From Octopus sinensis (taxonomy: Eukaryota): a stretch of DNA of 64,000 nt. The position numbers and the translations under genes are program-made. How positions within the stretch are numbered: position 1 is the first letter of the stretch; each line of letters opens with the position of its first letter. The DNA is taken from assembly GCF_006345805.1 (NCBI RefSeq), contig NC_043001.1, positions 90,644,001 through 90,708,000 of the forward strand. The letters run 5' to 3'. Positions 9,707-37,493 of the stretch are shown here, one piece after another. Below the pieces are notes generated by a model, which saw only the letters and a list, made by a program, of their open reading frames with translations, was not told the origin of the DNA and searched no databases.

Positions 9707-10026
9707 AGTGGTGAAATATATATATATATATATATATATATAAACGTTCGCATAACATTTATATATTTGTCATGTGAACAATGATATTTTGAAAACAAAT
9801 GAGTTTGATATTTAATTTCATTTTAACTTCATATACTTATATTTGTGTATGAGAAACTGATGAACTACATACATTTTACGATAAAAACTTGCATTTTTAT
9901 TTTGATTAAATTCAGAACAAAACCTTTGAATGTTTTTCGTCTGCATTCAGCGTCTCTTACTGTCACTCATTCCCACTCCGTTTGTTGTTTTACACTTCTT
10001 TTTCCAGCGCGATCCAATCTCACCTA

Positions 10027-12141: not shown

Positions 12142-13086
<945 letters not shown>

Positions 13087-16700: not shown

Positions 16701-17830
16701 GTTGGGAGTGGGTGCTTGATCCTGGTCTTCTCTAATATATTGGCAGAGCGTCCTCACTATGTCTTGATGGTCATCATCGTATTCTTGTGATATAGCTCTT
16801 CCTATTAATTCTGCATCATTTGCTGGGAATGCATTTACTTTTACACTTTGCTCTACGTCTTCACTGCTGCCTTCCATTTTTCTTTTCTTACTGGGCACGA
16901 TGTTATCTGTTGGTAAAGTATTATTTCTATCTTCTACTTTCCTTTTTATCTCTTCTATTTCCATGTCTGTTAACTACCCTTTTGCTCTTATTCCTCTAGC
17001 CTGATCGGCTACCCATTGCTCACTATCTCATCCCATTTTACTTTCATTCGATGTCGGAATCCCCTTCTGTTGAGTTCACTCCTGATCCAGTATTCAATTA
17101 CCGTTCGGTTGGCCTCCTTATTTCACCTTCATCTCTGCCTCTCGCTTTTTGTACAAGCAGTCTCTGGATGACGACTGGGCCTGCCACACAGCACCTGCCG
17201 GGCGAAAGGCTTTCACCTTTGGCTCCAGCATCATTAACACCATTATTTGATACATTTGCATTAGACATTTTCGTCAACATTGAGGTATATGTTTTAAGGT
17301 TAGCCGCCAACCGGTATTTTTATCTAGACACCATCTCTAGTAAGATTGTCAACCAAGACAGCAGTGCTCTTACTACCCATAAGTTGGGTCTGTTCCCTTC
17401 GCATTTCTGTATATTGAGGATCATGATCGTGATTCTCACTAGGAGACAGGTGAGCGTAGGTTGATCCCTTATCTTCATACAAATATTGCTCAGGAGTTAA
17501 GCCCACTTCGCGATTCATTTGCCTTCATCCCTGGCGTGGAGCCGTTGGACACTGACAGGTTGACACCACTGTAACTAAGGTGTCCTATCTACTCCAGTTT
17601 TATATCAAAGTGTTCTTTCTCCAAGACAGACTATCAACCAAAGCTCACGAAATCTATCTACCCGTTTTCGGAAAGGCCATTAACTCTTTTGAGTTTCTCT
17701 GCTCTTTGCCGAGTTTTGTTTTTAATCCCACAAGGTGTCGAAAATCCACCCTCCTCACCAAGCAAGCTTAGTGGGGTTGCCAGTTTAGTCGCCGACGACT
17801 CGACGGCTCTACAACGCCGCATGTTAATCA
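13724..17830 (-). mobile_element. R4/Dong non-LTR retrotransposon, near full length, degenerate
   Basis: N-terminal EPYWRRRICEK; RT KSPGPDGVQGYWMKKL; thumb KRANGGRGLISVEDC; CPRLAQNHY; RLE KILWDFPLQTD..LEHKRLDLVV / IVDVACPFD / RLWKMKVKIVPI; 3' UTR followed by (TAA)n. Confidence 0.88.
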
Positions 17831-18079
17831 TTCTGGGTAATTATCAATCTGGATAATTATTTACTTGGTTACTATTATAGTTTCACTATTACTACTATAA
17901 TCCCTATCTTGTTATTTACTTGTTCACTACAATAGTTTCACAATTATCACTATACTTATATCATTACTATAAGGCTTAGAGGTCCTAATATTATCTCCCC
18001 TGATTTCTTTAGGCAACAAATGATGACAGATTTACGGCTGTTGGTTTAGTTACTGATGATGCTGCGGCGCTAAATGGAA

Positions 18080-18465
18080 GAGTGAGCTGGCAGAATCGTT
18101 AGGACGCCGGGCGAAATGCTTAGCGGTATTTCGTCTGCCGTTACGTTCTGAGTTCAAATTCCGCCGAGGTCGAATTTGCCTTTCATCCTTTCGGGGTCGA
18201 TAAATTAAGTACCAGTTACGTACTGGGGTCGATATAATAGACTTAATACCTATGTCTGTCCATGTTTGTCCCCTCTATGTTTAGCCCCTTGTGGGTAATA
18301 AAGAAATAGGTATTTCGTCTGCCGCTACGTTCTGAGTTCAAATTCCGCCGAGGTCGACTTTGCCTTTCATCCTTTCGGGGTCGATTAAATAAGTACCAGT
18401 TACGCACTGGGATCGATATAATCGACTTAATCTGTTTGTCTGTCCTCGTTTATCCCCTCTGTTAT
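18080..18465 (+). mobile_element. SINE family 1 dimer carrying the Tx1-like tail
   Basis: A/B boxes; unit ends GCCCCTTGTGGGTAATAAAGAAAT then restarts at GGTATTTCG. Confidence 0.82.
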
Positions 18466-19853: not shown

Positions 19854-20013
19854 TGAGCTAAGTATTAATAAAATGTGGTATACTATAAAAATTTCGGATA
19901 TATGTGTCTTAAAACATTCAGACAAGAAAATTCAGATGTAGCACATGAGGTATTATTCCTTACGAATATCCACATATCTATATTAAAAGTTTCACGATAA
20001 AAATATAGAAATA

Positions 20014-20563
20014 TTGGGCTGTCCGGAAAGTTCGTGCCGATTTATAGTAGCTTATATTTCGACTTATTTTAGAACATGTTTGAGTCCATAAAATAGGATT
20101 TCACTACACCTCCATTTAGAGCACAGTTTAAGCTATCTTTTCGTGGAAGAAGGTTTATGTTCCTATAACCTGTGTTAATTCTGTAACCCTTTAAAATAAA
20201 AGATGAGAAAGTTCATTTTCGGCACTTGATGCTTTGGGAACCAGACAAAAATTGCTGCAGCTCGGCTGGGATGTGTTACCAAAGATATTGTTCCTTCGGA
20301 TTTCCACTTATTCAGGTCTCTGAAGAATAGTCTTAATGGTGAACATTTCAATTCCTAAGATGACGTAAAAAGATACCTTGATGAATTCTTTGCCTTGAAA
20401 TCACTCCAATTCTGGGAAGAGGGTATTTTTAAGGTAAAGGAAAGATGGAGACGTATAGTGAAATGAAATGTTTCAGATTTGGTTCATTAAAAATGTAATG
20501 GCAAGTATTTAGTGACCTTTTACTTTCCTTTAAAAATTGGAACGAACTTTCCGGACAACCCAA
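20014..20563 (+). mobile_element. Internally deleted mariner
   Basis: TIRs TTGGGYTGTCCGGAAAGTTCGT with TA duplication; transposase C-terminus DIVPSDFHLFRSLKNSLNG...FWEEGIFK..ERW. Confidence 0.85.
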
Positions 20564-20627
20564 TATAAACATAACAATGAAATACGAATATAAACATGAG
20601 AAATAAAAACCTAAATTGTAAGAGGCG

Positions 20628-21987
20628 ATTAACCCATGATACTTTTCTTGTTTTCCTTATTATTTCGTTCATTTCAGGGCAGTCCCTGTATATTACTAAT
20701 GTTCCATAAAATTGGTGTCCCCATTTCGAAACTGTGGTTTCTGTTGAGTGTTCCCTTGTCTTCCTTTTAGGGCTGATTACTTCTTTATTCTCTTCCCTTG
20801 GTTTCTCCCTTTCTCTCTTCTTTCTTTCCATATTTTCTTTTTCTTTCGGTATATTGTTTTTTTCCTTTCTCCTGTCTCTGTTCTTTCTTGAGCTCATTTT
20901 CTGCTGTTTCTCTACTTTGTTTCTTTTGTTCTTTTCCTGATGTTTCTTTTTCCTTGTTTTCTTTCTCTTTCAGTGCATTGTTTTTTTTCCATTCTCCTGT
21001 TCTTTTTTTTCCTCTCTCTGTTCTTCTTCTGTAGTTTCTCCGCTCTGTGTCTTATTTTGTTCCTTTTCTGTTGTTTCTTTCTCCACTGTAAATTCATATA
21101 ATGGGCATTCTGCCCTTATATGACCTCTTGTTCCACATAAGTAACAATTCGGCCTTCTTCCCTCTGCAATTACGCCAATTGTCCTTCCATTTTCCACCTC
21201 TATCTGAAAGGGAATTCGCTCGATATTTTCTATTGTGGCCATCAACCACAACTCCACACCGAATCCCTTCCAGTTCACGACATTGGTTTCTGTGATCGGC
21301 CCAAGTTCTATTTCATCTTCAGCCGACCCTAGAATGGCTGTCACCAGCCATTCTGTCTTTATCTCCGGCGGTACGTTTGAGATCTTAACCCTTACTCCTC
21401 GTCTACCTTTGTATGTAGGTAGCATTATAAAATTTTCCGCTCTGAGTACAGTGGAAGAAGGCGAGGCTGCCTCTTCACTTGTTGCACACCTCACTTCCAC
21501 CGTACCATATTTCTTCCCTCTGCTTACATACGTCGCTTTGTCCATTATGTCACCAAGACACTTTTCTATATCTTCTATCGATATTCGCATTAGTTTCCTT
21601 GAGTTCTTGTCCTGTGTCCTGTATATTATCATTTTGTTGTCTCTCTCCTCCGTTGTTTCTGCTGGAGGGATCAGCTTGACGCTTTCACCCTCCCTTTTTA
21701 CATATTTCTCATACTCCTTCATTTCTTCCCTCTTGAAAGTTGCGTCTCTTATCACAAGCGATGATCCACTCTTCGTTGCGGCAACCCCCGTATATGTCTC
21801 CATGACTGAGGGTCGACGTTCCTACTATGAAAAGTAACGACAAGCAGCGGCAAGCGCCTCGCGCGATTCGATCCTGTTTCGTCTCTCTCTACAATTTTTC
21901 ACTCTTCTTCACACAAAAATAACATCCGACTGCGGCACTACATGGTGAGTATTCAGTTGGTGAAAGTTCAGTTGTTGAGTATCGATG
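20628..21987 (-). mobile_element. Tx1-array unit A: ORF1-only element, 3'-truncated
   Basis: ORF from 21803: RRM-like VKISNVPPEI, CCHC CYLCGTRGHIRAEC, K/E-rich tail continuing in the 20520-20897 frame; paralogous to unit C. Confidence 0.8.
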
Positions 21988-21989
21988 AT

Positions 21990-23716
21990 GATTTTTTATT
22001 ACCCACAAGGGGCCAACAAAGAAGGGACAATACAAATCGGGGAACTTAAAAATAACAAAAGTGGATGAAAATAAGACGAAGACAAATTAAAAAATAATGA
22101 ATTATGAAGATATTACAATGAGGTGCAATGTCCACTCGATCCCCGAAATCGAGTGGTTACATTTTTGTCAGTCTCTCCCATATTGATTTTTTCAAAAATT
22201 TTACACAATTCACAAAGTTTATCGCACAAAAATTTCATAGAGTTTCAAAATACCTTTTGCTAACAGAATTTTCGGGGGTTTTTTCCTTCTTTTCCACAAA
22301 TTTAAGTGTATTCTATCTCGTGCACCAGTGTGTCGTATCTCTCCATGCGAGATGGACGCACTTTCAATCGACACTTCCATTGATCCACCACGTACTTCCC
22401 GGTGACCTCCATGTGTTAGCTGGAAGGGGTTGGGGAATTTTTTGCTGTTGTTCATGTGTGCTTGTAGTTTTTCTTTTTGTTTGGGGAGGGGAGTCCGGGG
22501 TGCTTTCTTTTTTACGCTTGTACGTTACCGTTACGTATTCCACCTGTTCGTCTTCCTTTTGTTTTTTCTCGTCTTCTTTTTCTGTTCTTCATTCTTTCTT
22601 CCGCTTTCTTTTTTCTCCTCCTTCTGTTTTCCAATTTGTTTTTTCTTTCCGTCTTCATCGCTCTCCTGCCTCACAGCAGTTTTTTGGGGGGGAGGGGGGG
22701 ACTTCAACTGCTGTTGTTTTTTTTTGGTACAAGTAGAGCAAACGTGGCCCTTCTGCCCACACTTAAAGCATCTGGGCCTACGTCCCTCTACCGACTCACG
22801 AATTGTGTGTCCCTCCCCTACGTCGATCCTGTCGGGCAAACTTTCAAGGGTTTGGTTGTCCCCTTGAACAACCATCTCCAAACTCTGACCCTTCCAGTTC
22901 GTCTCCTCTTTCATCCTCATGCTTAGTATTAATACCTTAGCTTCCACGTCGTACACGACTGCTGTTGCTGCCCACATCACATCATAACCGGCCGGTATGT
23001 CCTCAACTGTGATTTTAGCGGTTCGCCGCCCTAAATAAGTCGGTAACAACATAATTTCCTCATTTTTGAGAGTCCTCGTGGATATCTCCTTTGCTACGTT
23101 AGCCGACCCGAACTGTGCTTCAACTGTAGCACTTCGCACACCTCGGCTAACGTAGCGTACTCTGTTCCAGATGGGAGCCATGCATCGCTCCACCACTTCG
23201 TTCTTCACCTCTGCAATTCTCTTCTCCTTGATGTTGAATACCTTGCATACGACAGTTTTCTCTCGTATAGCCTGGACAGTTTCCTGGGGAGGTACCAGCT
23301 TAGTCTCTTCGCCATTTTTTACAATGTATTGTCTGAACTGGAAGAGCTTGTCCATTGCTACTTCCAGTTCGATAACTTTGCCACCTACTGCAGCTGAAAA
23401 GCTTGGTTTGTCCTTGTTGACCGTTTCGTTTCCGATATTTTTAATTGTTCCCATCTCGGGAAAATCCTTTTTTGACGCAAGGTCACACTCCATCGTATCC
23501 AAAAAATAAATAACCTTGTCGCAACTGACAAGAAATAATTATAAATGCAGGAATTTTCTGCCCCATAGGGCGAAAATTACTGTATGTCGTGAGACAACAG
23601 TTCAAAAACAAATACACAGTAAACACAAACTGGGACGAACTCACAATAACAAATAAGCAGCAACGAGGTACACGCGCAGTCGAGAATAAAGCAACCGGAG
23701 CCTAAGGGTATCGATG
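21990..23716 (-). mobile_element. Tx1-array unit B: ORF1-only element
   Basis: ORF from 23502: LLPTYLGRR, VEGRRPRCFKCGQKGHVCSTC; no ORF2; ends in the shared tail plus AATAAA. Confidence 0.82.
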
Positions 23717-23724
23717 AATAAGTG

Positions 23725-25723
23725 AATTTTTTATTACCCACAAGGGGCCAACAAAGATGGGACAATACAATCGGGAAAAATAAAAAAAGACGAAGACAAA
23801 TTTTAAAAATAATGAATTATGAAAGGATGTACAAATGCGGTGTCATGCCCACTCGATCCCCGAAATCGGGTGGTTACATTTCGTCAGTTCTGTTCACAGG
23901 GTTTCAAAATACATTTCACCAAAAATACATTTCACAAAATTTTCAAAATACATTTTCATAAAAAACATTTTACAGAATTTTAAAATACTTTTCACCAAAT
24001 TTCAAAATACATTTCACAAAGTTTTCAAAATACATTTTCAAAAAACATTTTACAGAATTTCAAAGTACATTTCAAAACTACATTTCGTTTAACAAGGTTT
24101 TTCTTTTCTAATTCTTTTTTTCCCATAATTTTAGATAAATTCCATTACCTCTACCGGATCATGGTAATACTCCATTGTACGTGGAAATTTTACCAGTCGG
24201 CACCTCGCGTGATTTACCACGTTCTTACCGGAGGTCTCGACGAACGCATCGGCGCTGTCTTCATGGATTAGTGCACCCGTTTCCTCCCACTTAGTACCCA
24301 TCTTAACCCATGAATATCCTTCTGTTCTGTCTATTAATTCCTCCATTTCCTCACTACACTTGTGTTGGACCAATGTTCCATAGAATTTATACCGCCTATT
24401 CAATCCTGTGTTTTCTCTTGTCTTCCTTTTAGGACTTATTTCTTCTTTACTCTCCTCTCTTGGTTTCTCTCTTTCTCTCTTTTTGCTTTCCTTTTTTTCT
24501 TTTTCTTTCTCTTGTCTTTTTAGTTCTTTGTCTGTTGTCTCTCTACCTTGTGCCTTATGTTCTTTTCCTGTTTTTTCTCTTTCCTTCAGTGTACTATCCT
24601 TTCCTTTCTCTTGGCTCTGTTTTGGTTCTTTTTCTATTGCTTCTCTACCCTGTGAATTTTGTTCTTTTTCTGTTAAATTTTTCCCTTTGTTTTCATTCTC
24701 CTTCAGTGTACTGTCATTTCCTTTCTCTTGTCGTTTTACCGTTATTTCTTTTTCCTTGTTTTCTTTCTCCTTTAGTGCACTGTTTTTTCCTTCGTGTTCT
24801 TTTTTCTCCTCTTTTTTGTTTTCTTCTGTTGTCTCTCCACTCTGTGTCTTATTTCGTTTCATTTCTTTCTCCACTGTGAATTCGTATAGTGGACACTCTG
24901 TTCTTATATGCCTTCTTGTTCCGCATAAGTAGCAGTTTGGCTTTCTTCCCTCTACAATTACGCCAATTGTTTTTTTCATTTTCTACTTCTATCTGAAAGG
25001 GAATTCGTTCTATATCTTCTATTGTGGCCATCAGCCACAACTCCACACCGAATCCCTCCCAGTTTACGACGTTGGTCTCTGTGATCGACCCTACTTCCAT
25101 TTCCTCTTTAGCCGACCCTAGAATGGCTGTCACCAGCCATTCCGTCTTTACTTCCGGCGGCACGTTTGGGATTTTAACCCGTACTCCTATTTTTCCTTTG
25201 TATGTAGGCCACATACTAAAATTCTCTGCTCTGAGTACAGTGGAAGATAGCGAGGCCGCCTCTTCTCTTGTTGCGCACCTCACTTCCACCGTACCATATT
25301 TCTTCCCTCTGCTCACATATGTTGCTTTGTTCATTATTTCACCGAGACACTTTTCTATCTCTTCTATCGCTATTCTCATTAGCTTCCTCGTGTTCTTGTC
25401 TTGTGTCCTGTAAATTATTGTCTCTCTCCTCCATTGTTTCAGCAGGAGGGATCAGCTTAACGCTTTCACCCTCCCTTTTAACGTATTTCTCATATTCCTT
25501 TAATTGTTCTTTCTTGAATGTTACTTCTCTTATTACAAGCGACGCATCACTCTTCGTTGCGGCAACACCCGCGTAAGTCTCCATGACTGAGGGTCGACGC
25601 TCCTTCTATAAAAGTACTTACACGCAGCGACAAGCGCCTCGCGCGATTCTGTCCTGCTTCGTCTCCTTCTACAATTTTCCTCTTTCACACAATAATAACG
25701 TCTGACTCTAAAGAGTATCGATG
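23725..25723 (-). mobile_element. Tx1-array unit C: ORF1-only element
   Basis: ORF1 25584 to 24131 (2 frameshifts), CYLCGTRRHIRTEC; AT-rich tandem repeats 23900-24090 in the 3' UTR; shared tail. Confidence 0.82.
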
Positions 25724-25725
25724 TA

Positions 25726-28700
25726 TTTCTTTATTACCTATAAAAGGCTACATAGTGGGGGACAGAACAATCACTAATGATTTTACAATTATGATGCATT
25801 TTGGGATCGATAAAAATTTGGATGATAGTTATACAGTTTCGAATGATAGTACATATACATTGGACAATTTTTAGAAATGGAGTGGGGCAGGTCTACGGAT
25901 CCCACGAACCCCGCCACGACACTTGGTCTTACGTTTTTTTTTCTTTTTTTTTCTCCGTCCTATCTCGTATTTATGAGGGACCTTTTACTCACGACATTTT
26001 TCCTTTCATTGAACACTTTCTTACTCAGGCTCCTCCTCTCTAGTTCTATTTGTCTTTTCATGTGGAATTTAAAAAAGACCACCAGACTAGAACCAGAGAT
26101 GAAGTCGCCTGTTATCATCCCTATCATCCTTGTCTTCCATACTACTTGTTTCGCAGTTGAAACTACAGAAAGAAAACAATTCTTACCTTCTTTCGTTAAG
26201 AAATCCGGTGGTCTGATTTTTACAATTGATTCAGCTGACAGCTGTACTCCTCCTCCATCTGACAACAGCTGTTCGGCAAAAACCCACATATCTGCCACCT
26301 CCGAACACTGTACGATCGCGTGCGAGACGGTTTCCTTGTCTCGCCCACACCTGGGACAGGTCGGGCTGACTTGGTATCCATGCCTTGCGAGTTTGTCCCG
26401 AACAGGTAAGGCACCTCGGTAACACTGCCAAGCCAAGGACTTCTGAAAATTATCCAGGGTCCCCGGCCCAAATGTACGTTGGAACAGACTGGCCAGCTGA
26501 TTATCGTCGAAACCTAGGGTCTCCCCTAGCGTATCATGGCAACCGGCCTCTACAAACCCTCTATAGAAAATAGCGGTAGAACCACTGCCGCAGGCATTGC
26601 CCGAGCGGCGGAATAGGCGGAGTGCCTTGCGACACTCCGTATACCATGAACCCAACTTCGATCTACGATTATACCAGTCTTCCCGTCCACCGAAACTGGT
26701 GAACCTGGGGAACATCTGTTTCGCCAGCGGAGACCACACCCGTTCACCATCCAGATGGATCCACATTAGCCACGGCATCCCTAGTCCACCCTTTAACGGT
26801 TTTTGACAACAAATAGAGTGTCTCACAAGTGGATTCGAGCCCTTCCACAAGAAGAGGAAGAGCTGTCTTTCCAACCTGGTCAACCATGAATCCGGGCGAG
26901 GCACGACGGCAAGGCGGTGGGTGATCACCGATGCGATAAACACATTGGCTACCTCCGTCCTACCTTTCAGGGATAACCACCGCCAAGACCAGGTCTTGAC
27001 TACTGCGGCCACCCTGCTCGATACTTCGCTCCAGTTCTTCTCTATTTGGAGGTCTGGTCCAAACCAAACCCCGAGCAACTTAATCGGACCCTCCGTCCAA
27101 CGTCCCAACTTTTGCTCCTGTCACCGTCTCGTAAACCTCTATGGCCTTGCCTACTTTACGTAGGAGGTCCACTTCGGTCATGATGATAGTAATGTCATCC
27201 GCGTACGCCGAAACCGACATTCCACGACCTGGCTGCCTCGGGATGCCGCTCAGTTTTCGCAGCAGCGGCTCAAGAGCCACTACATACATAAGCGGGGAGA
27301 GCGGACATCCCTGACGAACCGAGCATTTGACCTTGAACGGCTTAGAAAGAAAGCCGTTCACCCGAACTACCGAGTCGATGTTGTCGTACATTTCGATGAT
27401 CCACCTGAGGAAGCCAAGACCCAGGCCGAACTGAGCCAGAACGGACACCAGGTAGTGATGGTCGACCCTATCGAAAGCTTTTGATTGGTCTAAATGGACC
27501 ACTGCCCCTCCCTTGCGGGGATCGTTATTAATTCCCTCTATAGTGTATCTAATGAGATGGAGATTATCCTGAATGGACCTGCCCGGTACGGCACACGTTT
27601 GTGCTTTCCCAATCAGTCCACTCGCGACACGCGCCAATCTGTTCGATAACACTTGGGCCAAAATCTTCAGCTCTGCGTTAAGCAGAGTGATGGGCCTAAA
27701 ATTATCAATGACATCCCCCTTACTCGGGTCCTTCCTGACTAGTGTCACCACTCCCCGACGCACAGATCTGGGAATAAACCCATTCTGTTGCCAGTTCGCG
27801 TAGACGTTCGCCAGTAAGTCCCCGAACAAGTCCGGCATACTCTTGTAAAGCTCGTAGAGTAGACCATCCAGTCCCGGTGCCTTACCTGCACCGCAGTCAG
27901 CCATGGCCTCTATCACTTCAAAACCAGCCTCTTGACCTTCACCTGGGCCTCAGTGCCAGTTCGTATTGCTTCCTCTAAGTCCTTGACTAGTGTTGATTCC
28001 TTTCTAGCCTCTCTAGCTACAAGATCTATACTATACCTAATAGACTCGTATCGGATGGCTCGCTTGAGGGCATACCACCATTTGTTGTTAATAATGGATC
28101 CGGTCATGGCCCTCTGAATAATTAACCTAATCCTGTCACTGTACTCCTTAATCGCCAAGAGGGACGTATTAAGTTTCCAGTAACCAGAACCTCTATTTGT
28201 CTTATCTATGTCTAGCCTACAGGTGACTATCTTGTGGTCACTGTAGCTGACCATGTGGAGCTGTGGACTCTTAGCTAGGTTTCTATCTACCTTTCTAATT
28301 AATATCCTGTCTAAGTATGACTTGGAAGATCCGCCGTCTCTTGACCATGTCCACAATGGCACGTTCGGATGTTCCAGCCTATATGGATCTACCAGCTCAA
28401 AACGTCTTAGTAGATCCAGGAAGCAAGCATTTCCTTTCCTATCTGTACGCGAGCCTTCACAGTCTACCCGCGCATCGCATACTGTGTTGAAGTCTCCTAA
28501 CATTACTAAAGGATGCGTTGTACTCGGAAAATTACCGAGGTTACGAAAATAATCACTTTGCCCTTTGTTTTCGTTGGGTGCGTAAATCGCACCCAGGCTG
28601 ATTGTCTTACGACTACTGAACGTCAAATCAACGACGACCAGCCTACCCTCTGGATCTGCAAAAATCAACTTTTTCTCAGAAACCCGGTTCTTTTTACACA

Positions 28701-30690
28701 GGACCAACACCCCGCTTCCGCCGGACGACGGGTTCGGAGAGATAATTCTCTCGTAACCGTCGAACAGCGGGAGCAGATCTCTTGGCCCCTTTAACCGGGT
28801 TTCTGTGGCAACAACAACATCTAAATCTCGTGACCTGATGTCATTTAGGAGGCGCCCTTGCTTCCAGTTCGACATCAGGCCACGCACATTTATACACCCT
28901 ACACAAATACGAGACATTTCTTACCTTTTTAAAAAGTGTTCTTTATATCCCTGTTGGTCGTGGGGGGGAAGTCCGCCTTAAAAAATAACTCGTGCAGGTC
29001 GAGTCGCGGACCCCTGACATCCCCCGAGTACTGCGCACTTATGATATTGTAGTTTAACATGTCCATCTTGTATACTTCCACGTTTTTTGGCAGTTTTTTA
29101 AAGGTCTGCACTTTTTCTGCAGTTGGTATGTTTTCCATTTCGCTCTTTAGTCTATCGTTTTCTTTGTTTATTGCGGCGAAATCTGTCTGGAACTCGGTAA
29201 TTTTGGGGGGGCTTTGTGGGGGTGATGGGGAGGACAGCGGAGAGTATGATGGGGGGGGAGCACTGGGATATGTTTGGGAGGGGAGAGTATTGCTCGGCAC
29301 TGAGGGGTGGGGGTGGTTCGGGTTGGACTGGGGGGTCTTTTCTTTTTTACCTTTTTGTGGGGAACCGTGGTTGGGTGGGGTAGGTTTCCACCCTGGGTGT
29401 TAGTCTTCTTTGTATATGGAATGGGTGGGTTTGAATCACTATTTTTCCTTTTTTTCTTTTGCCTCGGTGTTATGAAGGCATCTTCCTCTTCCTGTTTCTT
29501 CTCTTCTTTTGTCTCTGTGTTCTTCTTCTTCGCCTCTTCTTCGGCTTTTTTCCTCTTCCTCTTTCTTGCGGGTGGGGCATTCCGCTCGGATGTGGCCCTT
29601 TTCGCCACACCCGTAGTATCTTGGCTTTCGCCCTTCTACCACCACCCGCAAGTTTATTTCTTCATCGAAGTTTATGTTTTCTGGCACCTCCTCTAGAGTT
29701 TCTGGGGCCGCCTGCACTAGTATCTGTAGTGTTTGGCCTCTCCAGTTCTCTTTTTGCATGTTTACTATGTTTAAAATGTTTATTTTATTTTCTAGCCCTA
29801 TTAATAGGGCTGGAATGAGGCACTTCACCTCAATTTCAGGGGTAATTTCTTCAATTCTTATTTTTGATGTCCTTCGTCCCATATACGAAGGTAGGAGAAT
29901 TATTTCCGTTGTTTTTATGGGGTAAATAGAATGCTTTTTTGCCTGCTCTTCTTTGAAATATACTGTTATTGTAGCATACTTCTTGCCCCATGTTACATAG
30001 TCTATGTCTCTCCATATCGGCTGGAGACATTTTTCAGCTTGTTCCTTTGTAACTTTATCAATTTTTTTCTCTTTTATAATAAAAGATTTGTATATCACTG
30101 TTCTTCTCAATGTGCTGTTTTTAATCTCTTTTGGGAGGGTGGCCTTTACGCTGTTCCCCTCCCTTGTAAACATTGCTTTGTATTTATCAAATTCTATGTC
30201 TTCTACTTTTATTTCTTCAGATTTCCTGCCGGCTGTGGCTGCAAAGTTGTACATCTTTTTTTCTTTCTCGGTTTCACCCGCAGGTGAACTATCACATACT
30301 GTTTTTGGTTTGGACGCATCCATTTCTTTTTTAGACTGTATGGTTTTCTTTGTAGGTGAACCTACAATGGTTTCCCTTGAAGGTGAACCTTCGTCGGTTA
30401 CATCTTCATACATCCTTTCGGAAGAAAGAACGTTTTCTTTATTCATTTCAGCAAAAATGAGTGGGGGGTTGGGTGGGGGGGTTCTATGCTACAAAGCACA
30501 CTTTCCCTTCCTTATAGGAGGGGACTAACAATATTTTCCTGGTCAAACACCAGGTGAATAACAGTTCAATTAACAATTTTTAAAAAGAGTTTAACACCAC
30601 TTCAATATCCAAAAACAGATAAACATTTACTTACAAGCAATATAACATATGACAAAATCCAGTGTTACTGAGTTCTAAAGAGTATCGATG
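25726..30690 (-). mobile_element. Tx1-array unit D: L1/Tx1-clade LINE with ORF1 and ORF2
   Basis: ORF1 30446 to 28929 (frameshifted; ..GCGEKGHIRAEC); ORF2 starts 12 nt later. Confidence 0.92.
25960..28917 (-). pseudogene. ORF2 of unit D: AP endonuclease, reverse transcriptase, C-terminal Zn finger (frameshifts, apparent EN-RT linker deletion)
   Basis: CINVRG, ATET, LGDFN, SYLDRIL, SDH (EN); KAPGLDG, RPITLLN, DQSKAFDRV, RQGCPLSP, YADD (RT); CPRC..KETVSHAIVQC. Confidence 0.92.
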
Positions 30691-30691
30691 A

Positions 30692-32362
30692 TTTCTTTAT
30701 TACCCACTAGGGGCGACATAGAGGGGACACTACAAGACATTGGGGACATAGAACATTATAAAATAAAAGTATGTGAGATGAAATTTTGCAAATGATAATA
30801 TGAAAGTGATGCTAACGGCCCAATCCGCCAGCACCACTTACCTGTCCTTCATAACCCATCGTCATTTATCATCTTCAATCAAAAGCCCATATGTCTTTAT
30901 CATTCTCTCAGTCTTCCTTTCAATCTCTTTCACCGTCTCGTCCGCAAATGTTACCTTAATCACTTTCACACCCTCATTTACACACTTCGCCATAATTCCC
31001 TCCATTTGTTCCCTAGGCCCCACCGCATAACTCCCTTCTGCTCTCTCATACCATGAATAATTGTTTATTATGTCTTTCGAATCCTCAGTGTCCTCTCTTT
31101 TTACGAAACATAAAATATGGGGCTGGGATCTTGTTTACTTTGTGTGTCTGCGTTGTTTTTTGGTTTTCTTGTAGGCGGGGAATGGGTGGAATCACTGTTT
31201 GTAGGGGAAGGATGGGACTCAGAGGGTGCGGGTGGTGTTGGGGTGGGTTGGGGTTCACCATAATTCGATTTTCTTCTCTTTTTTCTCTTCTTTCTTGCAT
31301 CTTCCCATTTAGTCTGAGCTTCCTCCTCCTCGGTTCTTCCTCCTCAACTTGTTTTTGCTCCACCTCCTCCTTTTCCTGGTTCACAGTTTCCTTTTGTGGG
31401 GGAGGGCAGTTATCTCTTATGTGGCCCCTCAGGCCACACTTATAGCATCTTGGTGCTCTGCCCTCCACCCATACTCTCATTACAATATTTCCCATGTTTA
31501 CGTTGTCGGTCATTCTTTCGAGTGTACCCTCCTCCGCTTGTACACTCATTTCAAGCGTCTTACCTCGCCAGCCTTCACTCTTTACGGTAGCCTGCAAGAT
31601 GTCTACCTACTCTTCGACTTCTTTTATTACCGCTGCAACAACCCATTCACCTTCTATGTGGGCGGGGGGTTATCTCTTCCACTCTTATTCTTGTGGTTCT
31701 CTTGTTCATATATGTTGGTAATAAGATTACCTTTTCTGTTTTGATCGCCTTTGCTGCCATTTTTCTCGCCATATTCTTACTTCCAAACTGCACCATTATC
31801 GTTCCGTACTCACTACCTCTCGCCACAAATACAATTTCTTCTTCCACTCTCCTTAACGCCTCCTCAATATCTTCCATTTTTATCATCTCCACTCTCTTGT
31901 TATCATTTACATATGTCCGGTACTTAATAAATCTTTTCTCAAACCATTCACTACGTTTTTCTGGTGGTAATAGTTTTACCTCTCCTCCTTCCTTCATCAT
32001 ATATGCCTGAAAGCCTGGCAACTTTTCCAGGTCTCTCTCCTTTTCTTCTGTCTTCCTTGCTGCTCCATCATACGTCTTACCGACCTTTACATCCATTTTA
32101 TTGACGGCACCAATTAGCTCGTCCTCGGAGGTCGATGCCTCCGATATACTCTCGAATAGCCTTTCTTCTGCCGTCTCTCCCATTAGGGAGGGGCGGTCCA
32201 TCACTTTTTGTCTGTCTCAATACAGACAGACAACGGCCGACAGACCGAAAACAGTGTAACAAAGTCGTATAACAAAACGTATAATTCAACAGCAAATAAT
32301 TGGCAACTTACAATAAAGTCTAAAAGAGAGAGTTTTTGAGTATCCTCTAAAGAGTATCGATG
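30692..32362 (-). mobile_element. Tx1-array unit E: ORF1-only element
   Basis: ORF1 32204 to about 31085 (frameshifted): LLPTYMNKR, VEGRAPRCYKCGLRGHIRDNC; shared tail. Confidence 0.82.
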
Positions 32363-32363
32363 A

Positions 32364-32527
32364 TTTCTTTATTACCCACTAGGGGCGACATAGAGGGGAC
32401 ACTACAAGACATTGGGGACATAGAACATTCTAAAATAAAAGTAAGATGAAATTTTGCAAATGATAATATGAAAGTGATGCTAACGGCCCCATCCGCCAGC
32501 ACCACTTACTTGTCCTTCATAACCCAT
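32364..32527 (-). mobile_element. Tx1-array unit F: 5'-truncated 3' end of the unit-E family
   Basis: Nearly identical to 30692-30859. Confidence 0.85.
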
Positions 32528-32819
32528 ATACGATGTGTTCTATGGTGTTGATTCAGTAATTATCGATCATCGTTAATTATACTCAATGTTAGACTGTATG
32601 AGGTGGTTAATGTATGATGCTAATGTCGTGGATTTTTTTATATAGTGGTGAATAAATGAATTCTTGCGTCCCCTATATCTATTTCTAAAATCAGTAGTAC
32701 TCCCTATATAAATTTTCCTAAGTCCGGAGCGTTAAACTAATAAACCTGTTTGCTGTTTACACACCCGTCTTCGTCTTTTGTTCGTTTCTTTTGTAAATTC
32801 CAAATATATATTTATATAT

Positions 32820-32861
<42 letters not shown>

Positions 32862-32958
32862 CGGGAAGCTTTATGAAAATAAACAAAAGACGAAGGCAGG
32901 TGGAAAACAAACGAACAATTGTATTAGTATGGCGCTCAGGAAATATAAATAAAACAAG

Positions 32959-32996
32959 TCTTTAACGTTTCGAGCCTACGCTCTTCAACAGAAAGA
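32959..32996 (-). ncRNA. Minimal hammerhead ribozyme motif (PLE repeat 1)
   Basis: UCUUU-CUGUUGA-A-GAGC-GUAG-GCUC-GAAA-CGUU-AAAGA: stems I and II form, palindromic ACGU stem III, A6U core variant. Confidence 0.7.
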
Positions 32997-33826
32997 TACA
33001 CAGAGAGAGAAAAACACAGAAAGAAGGAGAGAAAAAAAATGCGTGCAGTAGCTAACGAATCAACATGGCGATCTGATTTCGGCCAGAGGTCAAAGATCAA
33101 ACATGAGACGCGAGAGCGAAATAAGGGGAGATAATAGGGTTGATAAATGGGTTGAGGGACCAGCTAAAAGTGCGTGGGAGGGGTCTGGATGTGTGTTTGT
33201 ATAGGGTTGGTGTATGTATTAGTATGTATAAGGGTGTGTGTGTGTGTGTGTGTGTGTATGAGAGAGTATTAGTGCGTAAGATTGGTCTGGACATGCGTAT
33301 GTATGGGGTTGGTGTATGTATTAGTATGTATTAGTATGTATTAGTACGTATTGGTATGTATAGGTGTGTGTGTGTGTGTGTGAGAGAGTATAAGTGCGTA
33401 TGCGGGGTCTGGACGTGTGTATGTATAGGGTTGGTGTAAGTATTAGTATGTACTAGTATGTATTAGTACGTATTAGTATGTATTAGTTGGTGTGTGTATT
33501 AGTATGGCACATCATATGTGATGTGATGTGTAAAGTCATGTGGTGTAGTGAGGAGAAGAGGGGGACGGGGAGAAGAGGGGGACGGGGAAAGAGGGGGGAG
33601 AAAGGGAGGGGAAGAAGAGGGGGAGGAGAAGGGGGAGAGGAGAGGATGGGGGAGAAGGAAGGGGATGAGGGGGAGAGAGAAGGGGAGAGAGAGGGAGTGA
33701 GGGAGCAGAGGGAAGGGGAAGAGGGAGGGAGAAAGAGGGAGAAGGAAGGGGAGTAGGGGTGAAAGGATGAAGGACTGAAGAAGTAGGGGTCGGGGGGAGA
33801 AAGGATAGGTGAGGAGGGGGGTGAGG

Positions 33827-36786
33827 TTAGATGAGGAGGGGGGGAGAGTTGAGACCAAATGGCGTATAAGAGCGAAGAGAGAAGATTAATTCCTGTTCAC
33901 GGCGCAAACGGGAATCCGGATGGCCTCTGTGTAAGGACAAACCGAACACAGATAGGTGTTGCAAGGAGTGACCGGTGGAGCGGAAATGGCGTGAGACCGG
34001 TGTGTCGTTCGCAAGGTGGATGTCACGAAGGTGTTCCGCGAACCGGTCAGCCAAGCGGCGTCCCGTTTGTCCGATGTACAAGGAATTGCAGAGAGAGCAA
34101 GAGATGCAATAGATAATATTGCTGGAGGTGCAGGTGAAGGAGTGGATGATGGGATAGGGTCGATGGTGGGTGCTAGTGAGGCGGGTGGTGTTGGAGAGGT
34201 AAGGGCAAGTGCGGCAACGTGGGCGGGAGCAGGGGAACGAGCCGGGTTGGGAGGTAGGGTCAGGGAAGGAGCTATGGACCAAAAGGTCTCGAAGGTTGTG
34301 GGCTCGTTTGAAAGAGGGGAGGAGTCGGTTAGGGAAGAGGTGTGAAGTGGACGGGTCGGACTGGAGATGACGGAAAGCTCGAAGAATGGTGCGTTGGAGA
34401 CGTAGGGTCGTGGGGTGGTAAGTGAGGGGAAAAGGGAGGCGGGAGACTACAGGGCGGGTTCGGGGAGAGAGAGCAGATACACGGTCCACGGACCGTGCTC
34501 TGGCAAGGGCGGTGTGGATAGTGGTGAGGGGGTATCCACGTAGGGTGAAGTGGTGAGCCATACGTTGAGACTGAGTCTCAAGTCATGGTCGTCACTACAG
34601 AGCCTACGTAGACGGAGGAATTGGGAATAGGGGATGGAAAGCTTGGTGTGTTCTGGGTGGGAGGAAGAGAAGTTGAGGTATGAGTGTGAGTCTGTGTGTT
34701 TGTAGTGAATGGAGGTGGTAAGAGTGGAGTGAAGAATGCTAACCGAAATGTCGAGGAAGGAGACAGAGGTGTTGGAGATAGTGGAAGTGAAGTGGAGGGC
34801 TGGATGGAAAGATTGGACGAAAGAGAGGAAGGAATCTAGATGTTCGCGGGAGAGTGAGGTGGCACCGATAATGTCGTCAATATAACGACCATATAGTTCA
34901 GGAGTGGGACCAGTGAAATTAGAGAATATTTGGGCCTCAACATAGCCAACGAACAGGTTCGCATAGTTGGGGCCCATTCGCGTTCCCATGGCCACTCCCG
35001 AGACCTGATGGTAGAACTCGCCCGCGAACGAGAAGCAGTTCAGAGTAAGGACAAGTTCGGCCAGACGAATGAGTGTGGAGGTGTCAGGTACAGGTTAGAG
35101 CGGAGGTCAAGAAAGTGTCGAAGGGCCTGCAGTCCTTCGTGGTGAGGGATAACAGTATAGAGGCTTTGGATGTCCATAGTAAAAAGGATTTTGGAGGAGC
35201 CGGGAGGAAAGGAGAAAGAGTTGAAAAGCCGGAGAGCATGGTTGGTATCGTGGATGTGGGAGGGAAGAGATGCCACTAGGGGGGCAAGGACACGGTCGAG
35301 GTATTTAGAGATGAGCTCCGTGGGGCAGTTACAGGCGGAGACGATGGGGCGGCCAGGGTTGTTGGGTTTGGGGATTTTGGGGAGGAAGTAAATGGTGGGG
35401 GTACGTGGGGTTCGCACAATTAGGTTGGATGCGGTGCGGGGGAGACGGGAGGACGAGATGAGGTCTTGGACAGTAGAGGATACCGTCTGTTGGTAGCTAC
35501 GTGTGGGGTTAGAGGGCAGAGGGGAATAGAAGGAGGTGTCATTGAGTTGGCGGAAAGCCTCGGCCCTATAGAGGTCCGCGCGCCACACCACTACAGCTCC
35601 ACCCTTGTCAGCCGGTTTGATGATAATGTCAGCGCGCCGTTGGAGGGAACGAAGAGCCAAGAGCTCAGCCGGGGAGATGTTGAGGCGGCGTTGGCGCCTG
35701 GAGAAGTTGAACCGCTCCAATGCACGCTGACAAGCGCCCGCGAAAAGATCCACTGCTAGGATCTGGCCAGGGGCAGGCGTCCACGGGGATGGTCGGCGGC
35801 CCAGGCCAGTGAAGCAGTCGTCCTCTTCGTTGGGTGTGGGTGGCGAGTCGTGGTAATGCGCACACAACCGGACACGGCGCACAAAGCTGTGGACATCAAC
35901 TCGCGTCTGGAATTCCTTACAGGATGGAGTGAGGGGGATGAAACGCAGACCCCTACCAAGGACGGAGCGTTCAGCCGCAGAGAGGGGAAGATCGTGGGGA
36001 ATGGTAACAACAGACGGAAGTGGAGAAGGGGTGGATGGAATAGAAGTAGGAGGGGTGGTAGGTCTCGTGGAGGTCTGAGGGGGAGGGATTGGAGAGGTGT
36101 GTGGGGGGGTGGTTGGGCGGGGCAGTAGGGTTAGGTGTAGGTGGATGGAGCCTAACGGGAGGGGAGAAGGGGTTGTAGGGAGGGGCAGTGGGGTTAGGTG
36201 TGGGTGGATGGAGCCTATCGGGAGGGGAGAAGGGTGGTGGAGGAGTTGGGGTAGTGGCGTCGGGTAGGGTGGAATGGAAGAGTGATTGGAGTTTACGAAG
36301 TTTGGTATCAGAAAGAAATTGATGGAAGAGTTGATTCAAATGGATAATGAAGCGTAGCGTGTTTGGAGCATAGAGAGGCGGCAGAGAGGAGAAGAAGGTG
36401 GAGAAAGCAGGAGGAAGAAGGCGGTTGATGGCATGTAGTTTGGAGAGATTGAAGCGAATGGTGGCCCGCATAAGGCGGTAAGATGTGGTGCGGAGTATGG
36501 GTAAGATGGAAGAATCCGAGTGGAGAGCAGGGTGGAAGTGGAGGCGGAAACCTTTAGGGATGAGTCGGTGATGTAGGCAGCGGCTTAGGAAAGAGACATG
36601 GCTAGAGAAGCGGGTTTTTTTAAAAAGAAGTAGAGAGAGATTAACGGACGGCTGAAGGCAATATACAGGAAGCGAACGTAGATGATCCTTCAAACGGTGA
36701 TGGAGAGTGAGGAGGTAGGACCTAGGATCCGGCATGATGGGATAGCGGAAAAAAAACGTTCGAAAAAAAAAAAAAAAAAAAAACAA
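33827..36786 (-). pseudogene. PLE ORF (RT plus GIY-YIG endonuclease), split by about 3 frameshifts
   Basis: ORF-track pieces 35971-36786, 35040-35882, 34447-34995 and 33827-34561 are collinear. Confidence 0.9.
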
Positions 36787-37455
36787 AAATTATCGTATGA
36801 AAAAAATAGAAAAAAAGGATAGCGAAAAAAGGGGAAAAAACAAACGTTCAAAAAAACAAAAAAATAATAATCGTATGAAAAAACTAGATAAGTAAGCGAT
36901 AGGGGCAGAAAAGACGGGGCAAACGGAAAAGGGAAAGAAAGAAGGGAAGCAGAGAGAGGGGGAGGCAAAAAAAGGGGGGTGCAGGCAGAGGAAACGGAGT
37001 ATGGACATCCAGAGAGGGAAGAAAGACGGAAAGGAGAACAAAAATTCAGGAAAATGTGGGAAGCATGAAATGAATGTAAAAAAAGTGGTAATATAAGAGG
37101 AAATAAAAATACAACAAACGGGACAGTTTATGCGAACAAGTTCAAGGTTGAAAGTTCAAGGTGAGAAATGTGTAGACGTCGTGGTATATTTTTTAAGGAT
37201 TTCACATCAATGCAAAGTCACTTTGATCCGCGAAAGAGAGGTGCAGCCAATGGTAAGTATCCAAGAGGTAAAGAAAATCCAAGGTAGAGGTAAGTGTTGA
37301 TAGTGGTATTGGTAGAATATAGGATGAAAGTGAGACCACGTGAGCGCGTAATATATAACGGGAAGCTTTATGAAAATAAACAAAAGACGAAGGCAGGTGG
37401 AAAACAAACGAACAATTGTATTAGTATGGCGCTCAGGAAATATAAATAAAACAAG

Positions 37456-37493
37456 TCTTTAACGTTTCGAGCCTACGCTCTTCAACAGAAAGA
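37456..37493 (-). ncRNA. Minimal hammerhead ribozyme motif (PLE repeat 2)
   Basis: Identical to 32959-32996. Confidence 0.7.

What the first reader, a model, noticed from the sequence alone, without database searches (positions are those of the whole stretch)
20628..32527. 12-kb head-to-tail array of one Tx1-type LINE and several diverged ORF1-only (half-LINE) elements
Seen: six abutting minus-strand units. Only D has ORF2. B, C and E each carry a gag-like ORF1 (RRM-like segment, LLPTYxxR(R), (N)WxG, VEGRxPxCxxCGxxGHxxxxC, K/E-rich linker), then a short 3' UTR and a common terminal tail, with no ORF2 remnant; A has the same ORF1 but is 3'-truncated. The ORF1s fall into four very divergent families (A/C, B, D, E). 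Known: HAL1 half-L1 elements encode only ORF1, and Tx1-clade LINEs are often target-specific. Inference: octopods have a multi-family system of ORF1-only non-autonomous retroelements that borrow Tx1 ORF2p through a shared 3' end and pile up at one site. I am not aware of this being described in cephalopods.
Basis: partly seen in the sequence, partly recalled or inferred. Interest (0 to 1): 0.88.

Follow-up and report, generated by a model that had tools for sequence, protein, structure and literature searches.

The report
Octopus half-LINEs stacked at one site
This 12-kb stretch is a pile of six retrotransposon insertions at one genomic site, most encoding only the RNA-binding ORF1 protein and probably relying on the reverse transcriptase of related full-length elements, a kind of parasite-of-a-parasite known in flies, mosquitoes and mammals but which I did not find described for octopus.

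Summary
Window 20630-32527 (minus strand) holds six abutting L1/Tx1-type units, F-E-D-C-B-A. Only D has an ORF2, and it is broken. B, C and E have ORF1 with no ORF2 trace. A has the same ORF1 but is cut at its 3' end. F is a 165-nt 3' fragment of an E-type unit.

The ORF1-only form is not a local accident. A/C-type and E-type units with the same layout recur on three Octopus vulgaris chromosomes. One copy has an intact 467-aa ORF1. ORF1 shows dN/dS of about 0.06-0.15. B-type ORF1-only was seen only here; it is a chimera of a B-type ORF1 and an A/C-type 3' module.

The shared tail (...GTGGGTAATAAAGAAAT) also ends ORF2-bearing elements and a tRNA-like octopus SINE. It contains a 4-bp hairpin with compensatory changes.

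The 17 nt after each tail (CATCGATACTCTTTAGA) are not element sequence. They are a re-duplicated target site. Nested target duplications in an O. vulgaris locus show two families using one nick site. The array therefore most likely grew by successive insertions at one nick, A first and F last.

In kind this resembles HAL1, HeT-A and Ag-Sponge, so it is a new member of a known class and of moderate interest. Dependence on ORF2p in trans and Tx1 clade placement are inferred, not tested.

The parts
32528..32535 (-). Leftmost, partial copy of the target (CATCGTAT) just upstream of F
   Evidence: Read from sequence. It fits a short target-site duplication made by the last insertion, F. This is an inference.
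32363..32527 (-). Unit F: 5'-truncated E-type copy, 3' UTR and tail only
   Evidence: Together with the following target copy it forms a 186-nt block, 96% identical to 30674-30859 (ungapped sub-blocks 97-99%). It ends ...GTGGGTAATAAAGAAAT.
32346..32362 (-). Junction target copy CATCGATACTCTTTAGA (F/E)
30691..32345 (-). Unit E: E-type ORF1-only element. ORF1 runs 32204-31085 with one frame break near 31647-31597. A C-terminal peptide frame runs 31056-30862. The 3' UTR and tail end at 30691.
   Evidence: No ORF2 match. 56-61% protein identity to the O. vulgaris E-type ORF1-only unit in L003.
30674..30690 (-). Junction target copy CATCGATACTCTTTAGA (E/D)
25725..30673 (-). Unit D: full-length-type LINE. 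ORF1 30446-29439; inter-ORF coding piece 29300-28929; ORF2 with APE 28917-27913, RT 27916-27080 and zf-RVT C-terminus 27108-25960. The tail ends at 25725. D is defective.
   Evidence: Pfam Exo_endo_phos 2e-14, RVT_1 1e-27, zf-RVT 3e-10. About 100 aa are missing between APE and RT, and there is a frame break.
25707..25723 (-). Junction target copy CATCGATACTCTTTAGA (D/C)
23726..25706 (-). Unit C: A/C-type ORF1-only element. ORF1 25584-24131 with two frame breaks, a long K/E-rich repeat region and a C-terminal segment. 22-nt tandem repeats lie at 24086-23902. The 3' UTR and tail end at 23726.
   Evidence: No ORF2 match. About 70% nucleotide identity over the whole unit to the O. vulgaris L002 units.
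23701..23725 (-). C/B junction: TCACTTATT followed by target copy CATCGATACCCTTAGG
21991..23700 (-). Unit B: chimeric ORF1-only element. It has a B-type 5' UTR and ORF1 (23502-22531, 323 aa open). It then has an A/C-type C-terminal remnant (22412-22302), 3' UTR and tail ending at 21991.
   Evidence: ORF1 is 61% identical to the ORF1 of a full-length O. sinensis element. The 3' ~200 nt are 78% identical to C and 82% to an O. vulgaris ORF1-only tail. No match to the full-length B-type 3' UTR.
21977..21990 (-). B/A junction: CAT followed by target copy CATCGATACTC
20630..21976 (-). Unit A: A/C-type copy. ORF1 runs 21803-20970, followed by the linker and the start of the C-terminal segment. The 3' end is lost at about 20630.
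   Evidence: 84% nucleotide identity to C over 1013 nt. dN/dS against C is 0.16.
18070..18316 (+). tRNA-like SINE unit ending in the same tail (...GTCCCCTCTATGTTTAGCCCCTTGTGGGTAATAAAGAAAT). Other copies: 8605-8831, 44789-45018, 45011-45201, 47414-47646, 47639-47809.
   Evidence: The tail is 90% identical over 41 nt to the E/F tail.

Best explanation
The region is a stack of six non-LTR retrotransposon insertions of the L1/Tx1 type, all on the minus strand.

What the units are. B, C and E belong to ORF1-only, non-autonomous lineages. A is probably one too, but its 3' end is missing. These units keep a 5' UTR and an ORF1. ORF1 has two tandem RRM-like domains, a CCHC knuckle, a K/E-rich linker and a short C-terminal segment. 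They also keep a 3' UTR ending in a conserved tail: a small hairpin followed by AAUAAAGAAAU. They have no ORF2.

How they most likely move (inferred). They make their own ORF1 protein. Their RNA is probably copied into DNA by the ORF2 protein (endonuclease and reverse transcriptase) of full-length relatives. That protein would recognise the shared tail, which a tRNA-like SINE also carries.

How the array formed (inferred from the junctions). Each insertion duplicated 9-19 bp of target. That duplication restores the original nick site at the 5' side of the new copy. The next element was then inserted at the same nick (...AACA^CATCGATAC...). The order was A, B, C, D, E and finally the 5'-truncated F.
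For: Same architecture elsewhere:
- O. vulgaris L002 has 8 head-to-tail A/C-type ORF1-only units of 1776-1782 bp, followed by a full-length D-type element.
- L003 has an E-type then a C-type ORF1-only unit.
- L004 has an A/C-type and an E-type ORF1-only unit among 5'-truncated ORF2 elements and SINEs.
- Full-length B-type elements occur in O. sinensis L001 and O. bimaculoides L005.

Selection on ORF1:
- dN/dS in the structured part is 0.06-0.15 between ORF1-only copies.
- This includes units within the L002 array (u1 vs u7: 30 synonymous and 25 non-synonymous changes, Fisher p=3e-9).
- L002 unit 5 has an intact 467-aa ORF1.

No ORF2 remnant in A, B, C or E.

Shared tail:
- 26 tails from LINEs, ORF1-only units and SINEs were collected.
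- In 15 representative tails the hairpin is 96.7% paired. Three of its 4 pairs show compensatory changes, and 0-1 of 500 shuffles reach that level.
- The same fold is the predicted minimum-energy structure in five families.

Protein folds:
- The ORF1 model has tandem RRM-like domains; best Foldseek matches are IMP3 RRM12, NONO/SFPQ and UP1.
- ORF2 is closest to human L1 ORF2p (8e-42) and further from R2 (2e-25).

Same-site insertion:
- In L003 the order is SINE head | E-type | CAGAAACGTCAGCACGCCG | C-type | CAGAAACGTTAGCACGCCGGGCG... rest of the SINE. These are nested duplications of 11 and 19 bp.
- L005 has a 19-bp and L001 a 17-bp flanking duplication.
- O. vulgaris E-type tails stop at GAAAT without CATCGATAC, so the window's 17-mer is not element sequence.
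- The junction 17-mer is identical at F/E, E/D and D/C, matches 14/17 at C/B and only the first 11 nt at B/A. Only CATCGTAT remains left of F.
Against: - Mobilisation in trans was not and cannot be tested here.
- No intact autonomous helper was seen. D is broken, L001 has one frameshift, and the other ORF2 elements are truncated or run off the locus.
- A's 3' end is missing, so the duplication expected after the oldest unit cannot be checked. A itself could have come from a full-length element.
- All internal units of the window array have full 5' ends, and only the outermost unit (F) is truncated. A single-event template-jumping concatemer predicts exactly this pattern.
- The L002 array also shows a neighbour-similarity gradient, which is typical of unequal crossing-over.
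- The loci compared were found through annotated ORF1 proteins. They are a small and biased sample of octopus genomes.
Confidence: 0.72

Rival explanations
1. Single-event concatemer. One target-primed reverse transcription started on unit A's RNA. At each 5' end the reverse transcriptase jumped to the 3' tail of another tail-bearing RNA (B, C, D, E, F) and stopped inside F.
For: Only the outermost unit (F) is 5'-truncated, and E, D, C, B and A all keep their 5' UTRs. At each junction the only constant element sequence is the tail of the upstream unit.
Against: The 17-nt CATCGATACTCTTTAGA between units is not part of the E-type element in O. vulgaris. A jump would therefore not place it at every junction. 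L003 shows nested target duplications, which implies separate insertions. L004 has 5'-truncated units inside an array. A and C differ by 16% while the E and F tails differ by 1-4%, which suggests different ages.
Confidence: 0.1
2. Tail-targeted insertion. New copies enter directly after an existing tail because the primer must pair with the RNA 3' end. On this view CATCGATAC... is a species-specific 3' extension of the tail rather than target DNA.
For: Almost every tail in about 170 kb of sampled octopus DNA is followed within 0-70 nt by another retroelement. A similar TTCATCGCTACC follows the tail of the O. sinensis element.
Against: In L001 the same 17-mer also precedes the 5' end, where there is no upstream tail. 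In L003 the junction sequence is plainly SINE target DNA that continues into the SINE body. The A and C 5' UTRs begin at different distances from the motif.
Confidence: 0.12
3. The ORF1-only units are dead, random internal-deletion products. Alternatively the array is a DNA-level duplication or an assembly artefact.
For: C and E carry frameshifts. The L002 units show a neighbour-similarity gradient.
Against: The same ORF1-only layout recurs at four loci in two or more genomes at 56-73% protein identity, with dN/dS well below 1. The window units belong to four families with under 40% protein identity, so they are not duplicates of each other. Similar mixed arrays exist in three independent assemblies.
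Confidence: 0.04

Closest known systems
HAL1 (half-L1) of mammals (Bao & Jurka 2010, as cited in PMC5786205)
   Same: A non-autonomous derivative of an L1-superfamily LINE. It keeps ORF1 and the ends, lacks ORF2, and forms its own long-lived lineages.
   Different: Here ORF1 is the RRM-plus-CCHC type rather than the mammalian coiled-coil/RRM/CTD type. The 3' end is a specific structured tail rather than poly(A). Several unrelated ORF1 families share it, and the copies stack at one site.
HeT-A / TART / TAHRE of Drosophila telomeres (Jockey clade; PMC5786205, PMC5537684)
   Same: A Gag-only element (HeT-A) coexists with RT-encoding relatives in mixed head-to-tail arrays in one orientation.
   Different: The Drosophila arrays grow by addition to chromosome ends. 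The octopus arrays are internal (for example at 64 Mb of a 226-Mb chromosome) and carry target-site duplications at the junctions.
Ag-Sponge (CR1 clade, Anopheles; Biedler & Tu 2003, as cited in PMC5786205)
   Same: An ORF1-coding bipartite non-autonomous LINE.
   Different: It belongs to a different clade. No shared SINE tail or same-site stacking was reported in what I read.
Stringent-type LINE/SINE pairs with a common 3' tail (Ohshima & Okada, cited in PMC4824008; the eel UnaL2/UnaSINE1 stem-loop is from my own knowledge)
   Same: The LINE, its non-autonomous derivatives and a tRNA-like SINE share a conserved 3' tail containing a small stem-loop.
   Different: That behaviour is classically described for L2, CR1 and RTE-type LINEs. 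Here the partner belongs to the L1 superfamily, whose best-known members use poly(A).
Tandem TE dimers and arrays from double insertion at one target site (R1 array with 33-nt rDNA duplications; P-element dimers; McGurk & Barbash, bioRxiv 10.1101/158386)
   Same: Head-to-tail units are separated by a copy of the target-site duplication. 5'-truncated units mark independent insertions. Such arrays can later expand by unequal exchange, as may have happened in L002.
   Different: Here up to six insertions from four families share one nick site.

Membership tests
L1 superfamily LINE, Tx1 clade | ORF2 with an N-terminal APE endonuclease, an RT and a C-terminal zinc-binding domain | tested here: met
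   Pfam Exo_endo_phos, RVT_1 and zf-RVT in D. ORF2 of the relative in L001 matches human L1 ORF2p at 8e-42 and R2 at 2e-25.
L1 superfamily LINE, Tx1 clade | ORF1 with RRM domain(s) and a CCHC knuckle | tested here: met
   zf-CCHC in A; sub-threshold matches in D and E. The AlphaFold model has two RRM-like domains (pLDDT 88-92 over residues 50-240). Foldseek matches tandem-RRM proteins.
L1 superfamily LINE, Tx1 clade | Phylogenetic placement of the RT inside Tx1 rather than L1 proper | not tested
   No reference Tx1 sequences were available. The homologue search returned unnamed proteins. Published octopus annotations list 'L1-Tx1' as the only L1-like group (PMC13282606).
L1 superfamily LINE, Tx1 clade | Sequence-specific target choice, seen in many Tx1 families | tested here: inconclusive
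   The same nick was reused by several families (window; L003). The window's target is 11/12 identical to the L001 duplication. Other targets differ.
ORF1-coding non-autonomous LINE (the HAL1 / HeT-A / Ag-Sponge kind) | Encodes an ORF1 homologous to that of autonomous LINEs | tested here: met
ORF1-coding non-autonomous LINE (the HAL1 / HeT-A / Ag-Sponge kind) | No ORF2 at all, with both ends retained | tested here: met
   tblastn finds no ORF2 in B, C or E. Their 5' UTRs and tails are present.
ORF1-coding non-autonomous LINE (the HAL1 / HeT-A / Ag-Sponge kind) | Multiple dispersed copies with the same structure | tested here: met
   A/C-type occurs at L002, L003 and L004, and E-type at L003 and L004, on three O. 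vulgaris chromosomes. B-type ORF1-only was seen only in the window.
ORF1-coding non-autonomous LINE (the HAL1 / HeT-A / Ag-Sponge kind) | ORF1 kept under purifying selection | tested here: met
   dN/dS 0.06-0.28, Fisher p from 1e-5 to 3e-26.
ORF1-coding non-autonomous LINE (the HAL1 / HeT-A / Ag-Sponge kind) | Mobilised in trans by the partner's ORF2p | not testable with these tools
   Inferred from the tail shared with ORF2-bearing elements.
HAL1 proper | Derived from mammalian L1, with a type II ORF1 and a poly(A) end | tested here: not met
   ORF1 has a CCHC knuckle, and the units end in a specific tail without poly(A). This is an analogue of HAL1, not a member.
LINE/SINE pair with a common tail | The same 3' terminal sequence in LINE and SINE | tested here: met
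   87-90% identity over 40-41 nt between the SINE tail and the B, C, E and F tails (82% over 39 nt for D).
LINE/SINE pair with a common tail | A conserved RNA structure in the tail | tested here: met
   The 4-bp apical stem has 3 pairs with compensatory changes. The lower stem is conserved in sequence with no covariation.
Double-insertion tandem array | A target-site duplication lies between adjacent units | tested here: met
   L003 has nested 11- and 19-bp duplications of SINE DNA, and L005 has a 19-bp duplication. In the window this is inferred from the 17-mer at five junctions plus a partial copy upstream of F.

The most novel reading that the evidence does not exclude
Octopus genomes may carry an L1-superfamily (Tx1-type) retrotransposition system that recognises a specific structured 3' tail instead of poly(A). 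This system would be exploited at two levels. Several old ORF1-coding half-element lineages keep their own RNA-binding protein under selection and swap 3' modules. A tRNA-like SINE family carries the same tail, which would make this LINE group a driver of at least part of the large octopus SINE expansion. Because each insertion restores its own nick site, the system would also seed mixed tandem arrays that can grow into satellite-like repeats.
Probability: 0.35. Interest if true: 0.7.

Novelty: new member of a known kind. Interest (0 to 1): 0.5.

Why it matters
- ORF1-coding non-autonomous LINEs are listed from only three clades: Jockey HeT-A, L1 HAL1 and CR1 Ag-Sponge (PMC5786205). This would be a fourth case, in a mollusc.
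- It would involve several ORF1 families that are under selection, which bears on why some parasitic LINE derivatives keep ORF1.
- It gives a concrete candidate LINE partner and a candidate recognition element (hairpin plus AAUAAAGAAAU) for an abundant octopus SINE.
- It provides a clear natural example of tandem TE arrays built by repeated use of a regenerated target site.
- Practically, these units are being annotated as octopus genes ('uncharacterized protein LOC...'). They should be masked as transposable elements.

Tried and rejected
- Rfam and tRNA scans of the window found nothing, so the tail and junction are not a known RNA gene target.
- I considered that the peptide after the linker in B and C might be an ORF2 C-terminal remnant. 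tblastn gave no support. Full-length relatives also have a C-terminal ORF1 segment after the linker, though it showed no detectable similarity to that of the ORF1-only units.
- I considered that CATCGATAC might be part of the tail or of a common 5' end. O. vulgaris E-type tails lack it, and the A and C 5' UTRs start at different distances from it.
- I looked for an unoccupied copy of the target, or for A's missing 3' end, in the window and the fetched loci. None was found.
- The RT homologue search returned mostly unnamed ENA proteins at about 50% identity. It gave no clade name and no octopus loci.
- The lower stem of the tail fold shows no covariation, so only the apical hairpin is claimed.
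- The species of the window could not be fixed. Its ORF1s are 56-73% identical to Octopus relatives, and its SINE is up to 94% identical to O. vulgaris copies.

Full report
**What is in the window**

On the minus strand between 32527 and about 20630 there are six abutting retroelement units, named F, E, D, C, B and A from 5' to 3'.

A and C are 84% identical in DNA. B, D and E are 27-36% identical to A in protein.
- Only D has an ORF2, with Exo_endo_phos, RVT_1 and zf-RVT domains.
- tblastn with ORF2 proteins from D and from a full-length relative finds nothing in A, B, C or E.
- F is a 165-nt 3' fragment. With the following 17-nt junction copy it forms a 186-nt block, 96% identical to E's 3' end, so it is a 5'-truncated E-type copy.
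- A loses homology to C at about 20630 and has no 3' UTR or tail.
- D is not functional. Compared with three relatives it lacks about 330 nt between the endonuclease and the RT. It also has a frame break at the RT/C-terminal boundary.
- An AlphaFold model of B's ORF1 has pLDDT 88-92 over residues 50-240. It shows two tandem RRM-like domains followed by the knuckle, and its best structural matches are tandem-RRM proteins.
- After the K/E-rich linker, the ORF1-only units encode a further short conserved C-terminal segment before the 3' UTR.

**The ORF1-only form recurs elsewhere**

Protein searches with the B and A ORF1s found only a few annotated Octopus proteins. The DNA around them was informative.

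- O. vulgaris locus L002 has eight head-to-tail A/C-type units of 1776-1782 bp. Each has a 5' UTR, ORF1, linker, C-terminal segment, 3' UTR and tail. A full-length D-type element follows directly.
- Locus L003, on another chromosome, has an E-type ORF1-only unit followed by a C-type ORF1-only unit.
- Locus L004, on a third chromosome, has an A/C-type and an E-type ORF1-only unit. They sit among 5'-truncated ORF2-bearing elements and SINEs, all in one orientation.
- These copies are only 56-73% identical in protein to the window's (about 70% in DNA), yet they have the same layout. The ORF1-only architecture is therefore old and inherited, not a set of random deletions.
- B-type ORF1 was otherwise found in full-length elements: O. 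sinensis L001, and two elements in tandem in O. bimaculoides L005.
- The window's B is a chimera. Its 5' UTR and ORF1 are B-type. Its last ~200 nt (3' UTR and tail) match the A/C-type by BLAST. The C-terminal remnant and repeat region upstream resemble C by eye. Nothing matches the full-length B-type 3' UTR.

**Selection on ORF1**

- In the structured part of ORF1, dN/dS is 0.15 between A and C. It is 0.06-0.11 between window C and the O. vulgaris units.
- It is 0.14 even between units 1 and 7 of the L002 array. Over the whole aligned ORF (377 codons) that pair shows 30 synonymous against 25 non-synonymous changes (Fisher p=3e-9).
- Unit 5 of L002 has an intact 467-aa ORF1.
- The differences between copies were therefore mostly acquired in lineages that needed a working ORF1.

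**The shared tail**

- All units end in ...GTCCCCTCTATGT(n)GCCCCTTGTGGGTAATAAAGAAAT or a variant of it.
- The same tail ends the ORF2-bearing elements of L001 and L004.
- It also ends a tRNA-like SINE present six times in the window and many times in the other loci.
- In 15 representative tails, a 4-bp stem with a 5-nt loop sits just before AATAAAGAAAT. It is paired in 96.7% of cells, and three of its four pairs show compensatory changes. Between 0 and 1 of 500 shuffles reach that level.
- Five families fold into the same extended stem-loop. The lower stem does not vary, so it gives no evidence either way.
- A tail shared by the LINE, its ORF1-only derivatives and a SINE is the classical signature of recognition of the template's 3' end by the LINE reverse transcriptase.
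- That the ORF1-only units and the SINE are copied by ORF2p in trans is an inference from this signature. It was not tested.

**How the array formed**

- In the window each tail is followed by CATCGATACTCTTTAGA. This is identical at F/E, E/D and D/C. It reads CATCGATACCCTTAGG at C/B and CATCGATACTC at B/A.
- CATCGTAT lies just upstream of F.
- This 17-mer is not element sequence, because E-type tails in O. vulgaris stop at GAAAT and are followed by other sequences.
- L003 shows what the 17-mer is. There the order is SINE head, E-type unit, CAGAAACGTCAGCACGCCG, C-type unit, CAGAAACGTTAGCACGCCGGGCG..., and then the rest of the SINE.
- So two different families entered the same nick in a SINE, leaving nested target duplications of 11 and 19 bp.
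- L005 and L001 show 19- and 17-bp duplications.
- A long duplication restores the original nick site on the 5' side of the new copy, so the site can be cut again.
- I therefore read the window array as six successive insertions at ...AACA^CATCGATAC..., with A first and F last.
- This is the double-insertion route to tandem TEs described for R1 and P elements (bioRxiv 10.1101/158386). The L002 array may have grown further by unequal exchange.
- A single-event template-jumping concatemer and tail-directed insertion remain possible for the window. They fit the junction evidence less well.

**Comparison with what is known**

- ORF1-coding bipartite non-autonomous LINEs are listed as HeT-A (Jockey), HAL1 (L1) and Ag-Sponge (CR1) (PMC5786205).
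- Recent octopus repeat papers list L1-Tx1 families but do not mention ORF1-only derivatives (PMC13282606, PMC8967140, PMC9115989).
- The octopus elements work like HAL1 or HeT-A but are not HAL1 members. Their ORF1 is the RRM-plus-CCHC type, and the 3' end is a specific tail rather than poly(A).
- Placement in the Tx1 clade itself was not tested. ORF2 is closest to human L1 ORF2p among solved structures.

**Verdict**

There are four main corrections: D is dead, the last 17 nt of the 'tail' are target DNA, B is a chimera, and the tail is shared with a SINE. This is a new member of a known kind and of moderate interest.

Noticed in passing
window 8605-9211, 18070-18460, 44789-45313, 47414-47963 (+ strand); L004 13546-13708 and 17467-18318: SINE units that carry the LINE-type tail are always followed directly by another SINE unit. 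That next unit starts at SINE position ~13-23 or ~56. The last unit ends with a different tail (...cccctccccaaaat.gctg.gccttgtgcc). These are either composite SINE families or hot nick sites inside the SINE head. The position-13 site is the one used by the LINEs in L003.
   Followed up: partly
window 32854-33619 and 37351-38119: A 769-bp direct repeat, 99.1% identical and 4.5 kb apart, brackets minus-strand ORFs at 33827-34995. By eye these include a GIY-YIG-like motif (YIGQTGRRLADRFAEH). It looks like a Penelope-like element with terminal direct repeats, lying just upstream of the array. No domain search was run on these ORFs.
   Followed up: partly
window 20011-20566: 36-nt inverted repeats (20011-20046 and 20531-20566, 89% identical) delimit a ~556-bp element with mariner-like ends. 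It lies 64 nt beyond the point where unit A loses its 3' end.
   Followed up: no
window ~22160-22136 and ~23876-23852 (minus strand); also L002, L003, L004: The 3' UTR of B- and C-type ORF1-only units holds a conserved block, CTGAC(A/G)AAAATGTAACCAC(T/C)CGATTTCGGGGATCGAGTGGGCAT. It can form a 9-bp hairpin (CCACTCGAT / ATCGAGTGG). It may be a second RNA element.
   Followed up: no
window 23902-24086; L003 ~11880-12080: A tandem array of a ~22-nt unit (TGAAATGTATTTTGAAAATTTT-like) lies in the 3' UTR of C-type units. It is conserved as a feature between the window and O. vulgaris, and is reduced to one or two copies in B.
   Followed up: no
window junctions (e.g. 23716-23705) and L001 9730-9741 / 15274-15285: The window's reused target (TTCATCGATACC at C/B) is 11/12 identical to the 17-bp target duplication of a solitary full-length element in O. 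sinensis (TTCATCGCTACCTGGTG). This may be a preferred endonuclease motif.
   Followed up: partly
window 31056-30862; L003 ~9897-10040: In E-type units the conserved C-terminal peptide (...YE.(A/G)E..YAV...) lies in a different reading frame from ORF1, both in the window and in O. vulgaris. This is either shared decay or a programmed frame change.
   Followed up: no
window 14628-16964 (minus strand) and 12159-13061: ORFs from another minus-strand element, apparently unrelated to the array, lie at 14628-15131 and 16362-16964. A 900-bp ATG/ATA/CAT-type low-complexity tract reads as a 300-aa M/I/H/Y/D-run ORF at 12159-13061.
   Followed up: no
L001, L002, L003, L004, L005: NCBI and ENA gene models in three Octopus genomes annotate these ORF1s as 'uncharacterized protein' or 'hypothetical predicted protein'. 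Some models fuse parts of two adjacent units: P0004 joins an E-type C-terminus to a C-type ORF1, and P0001 spans 23 kb.
   Followed up: partly
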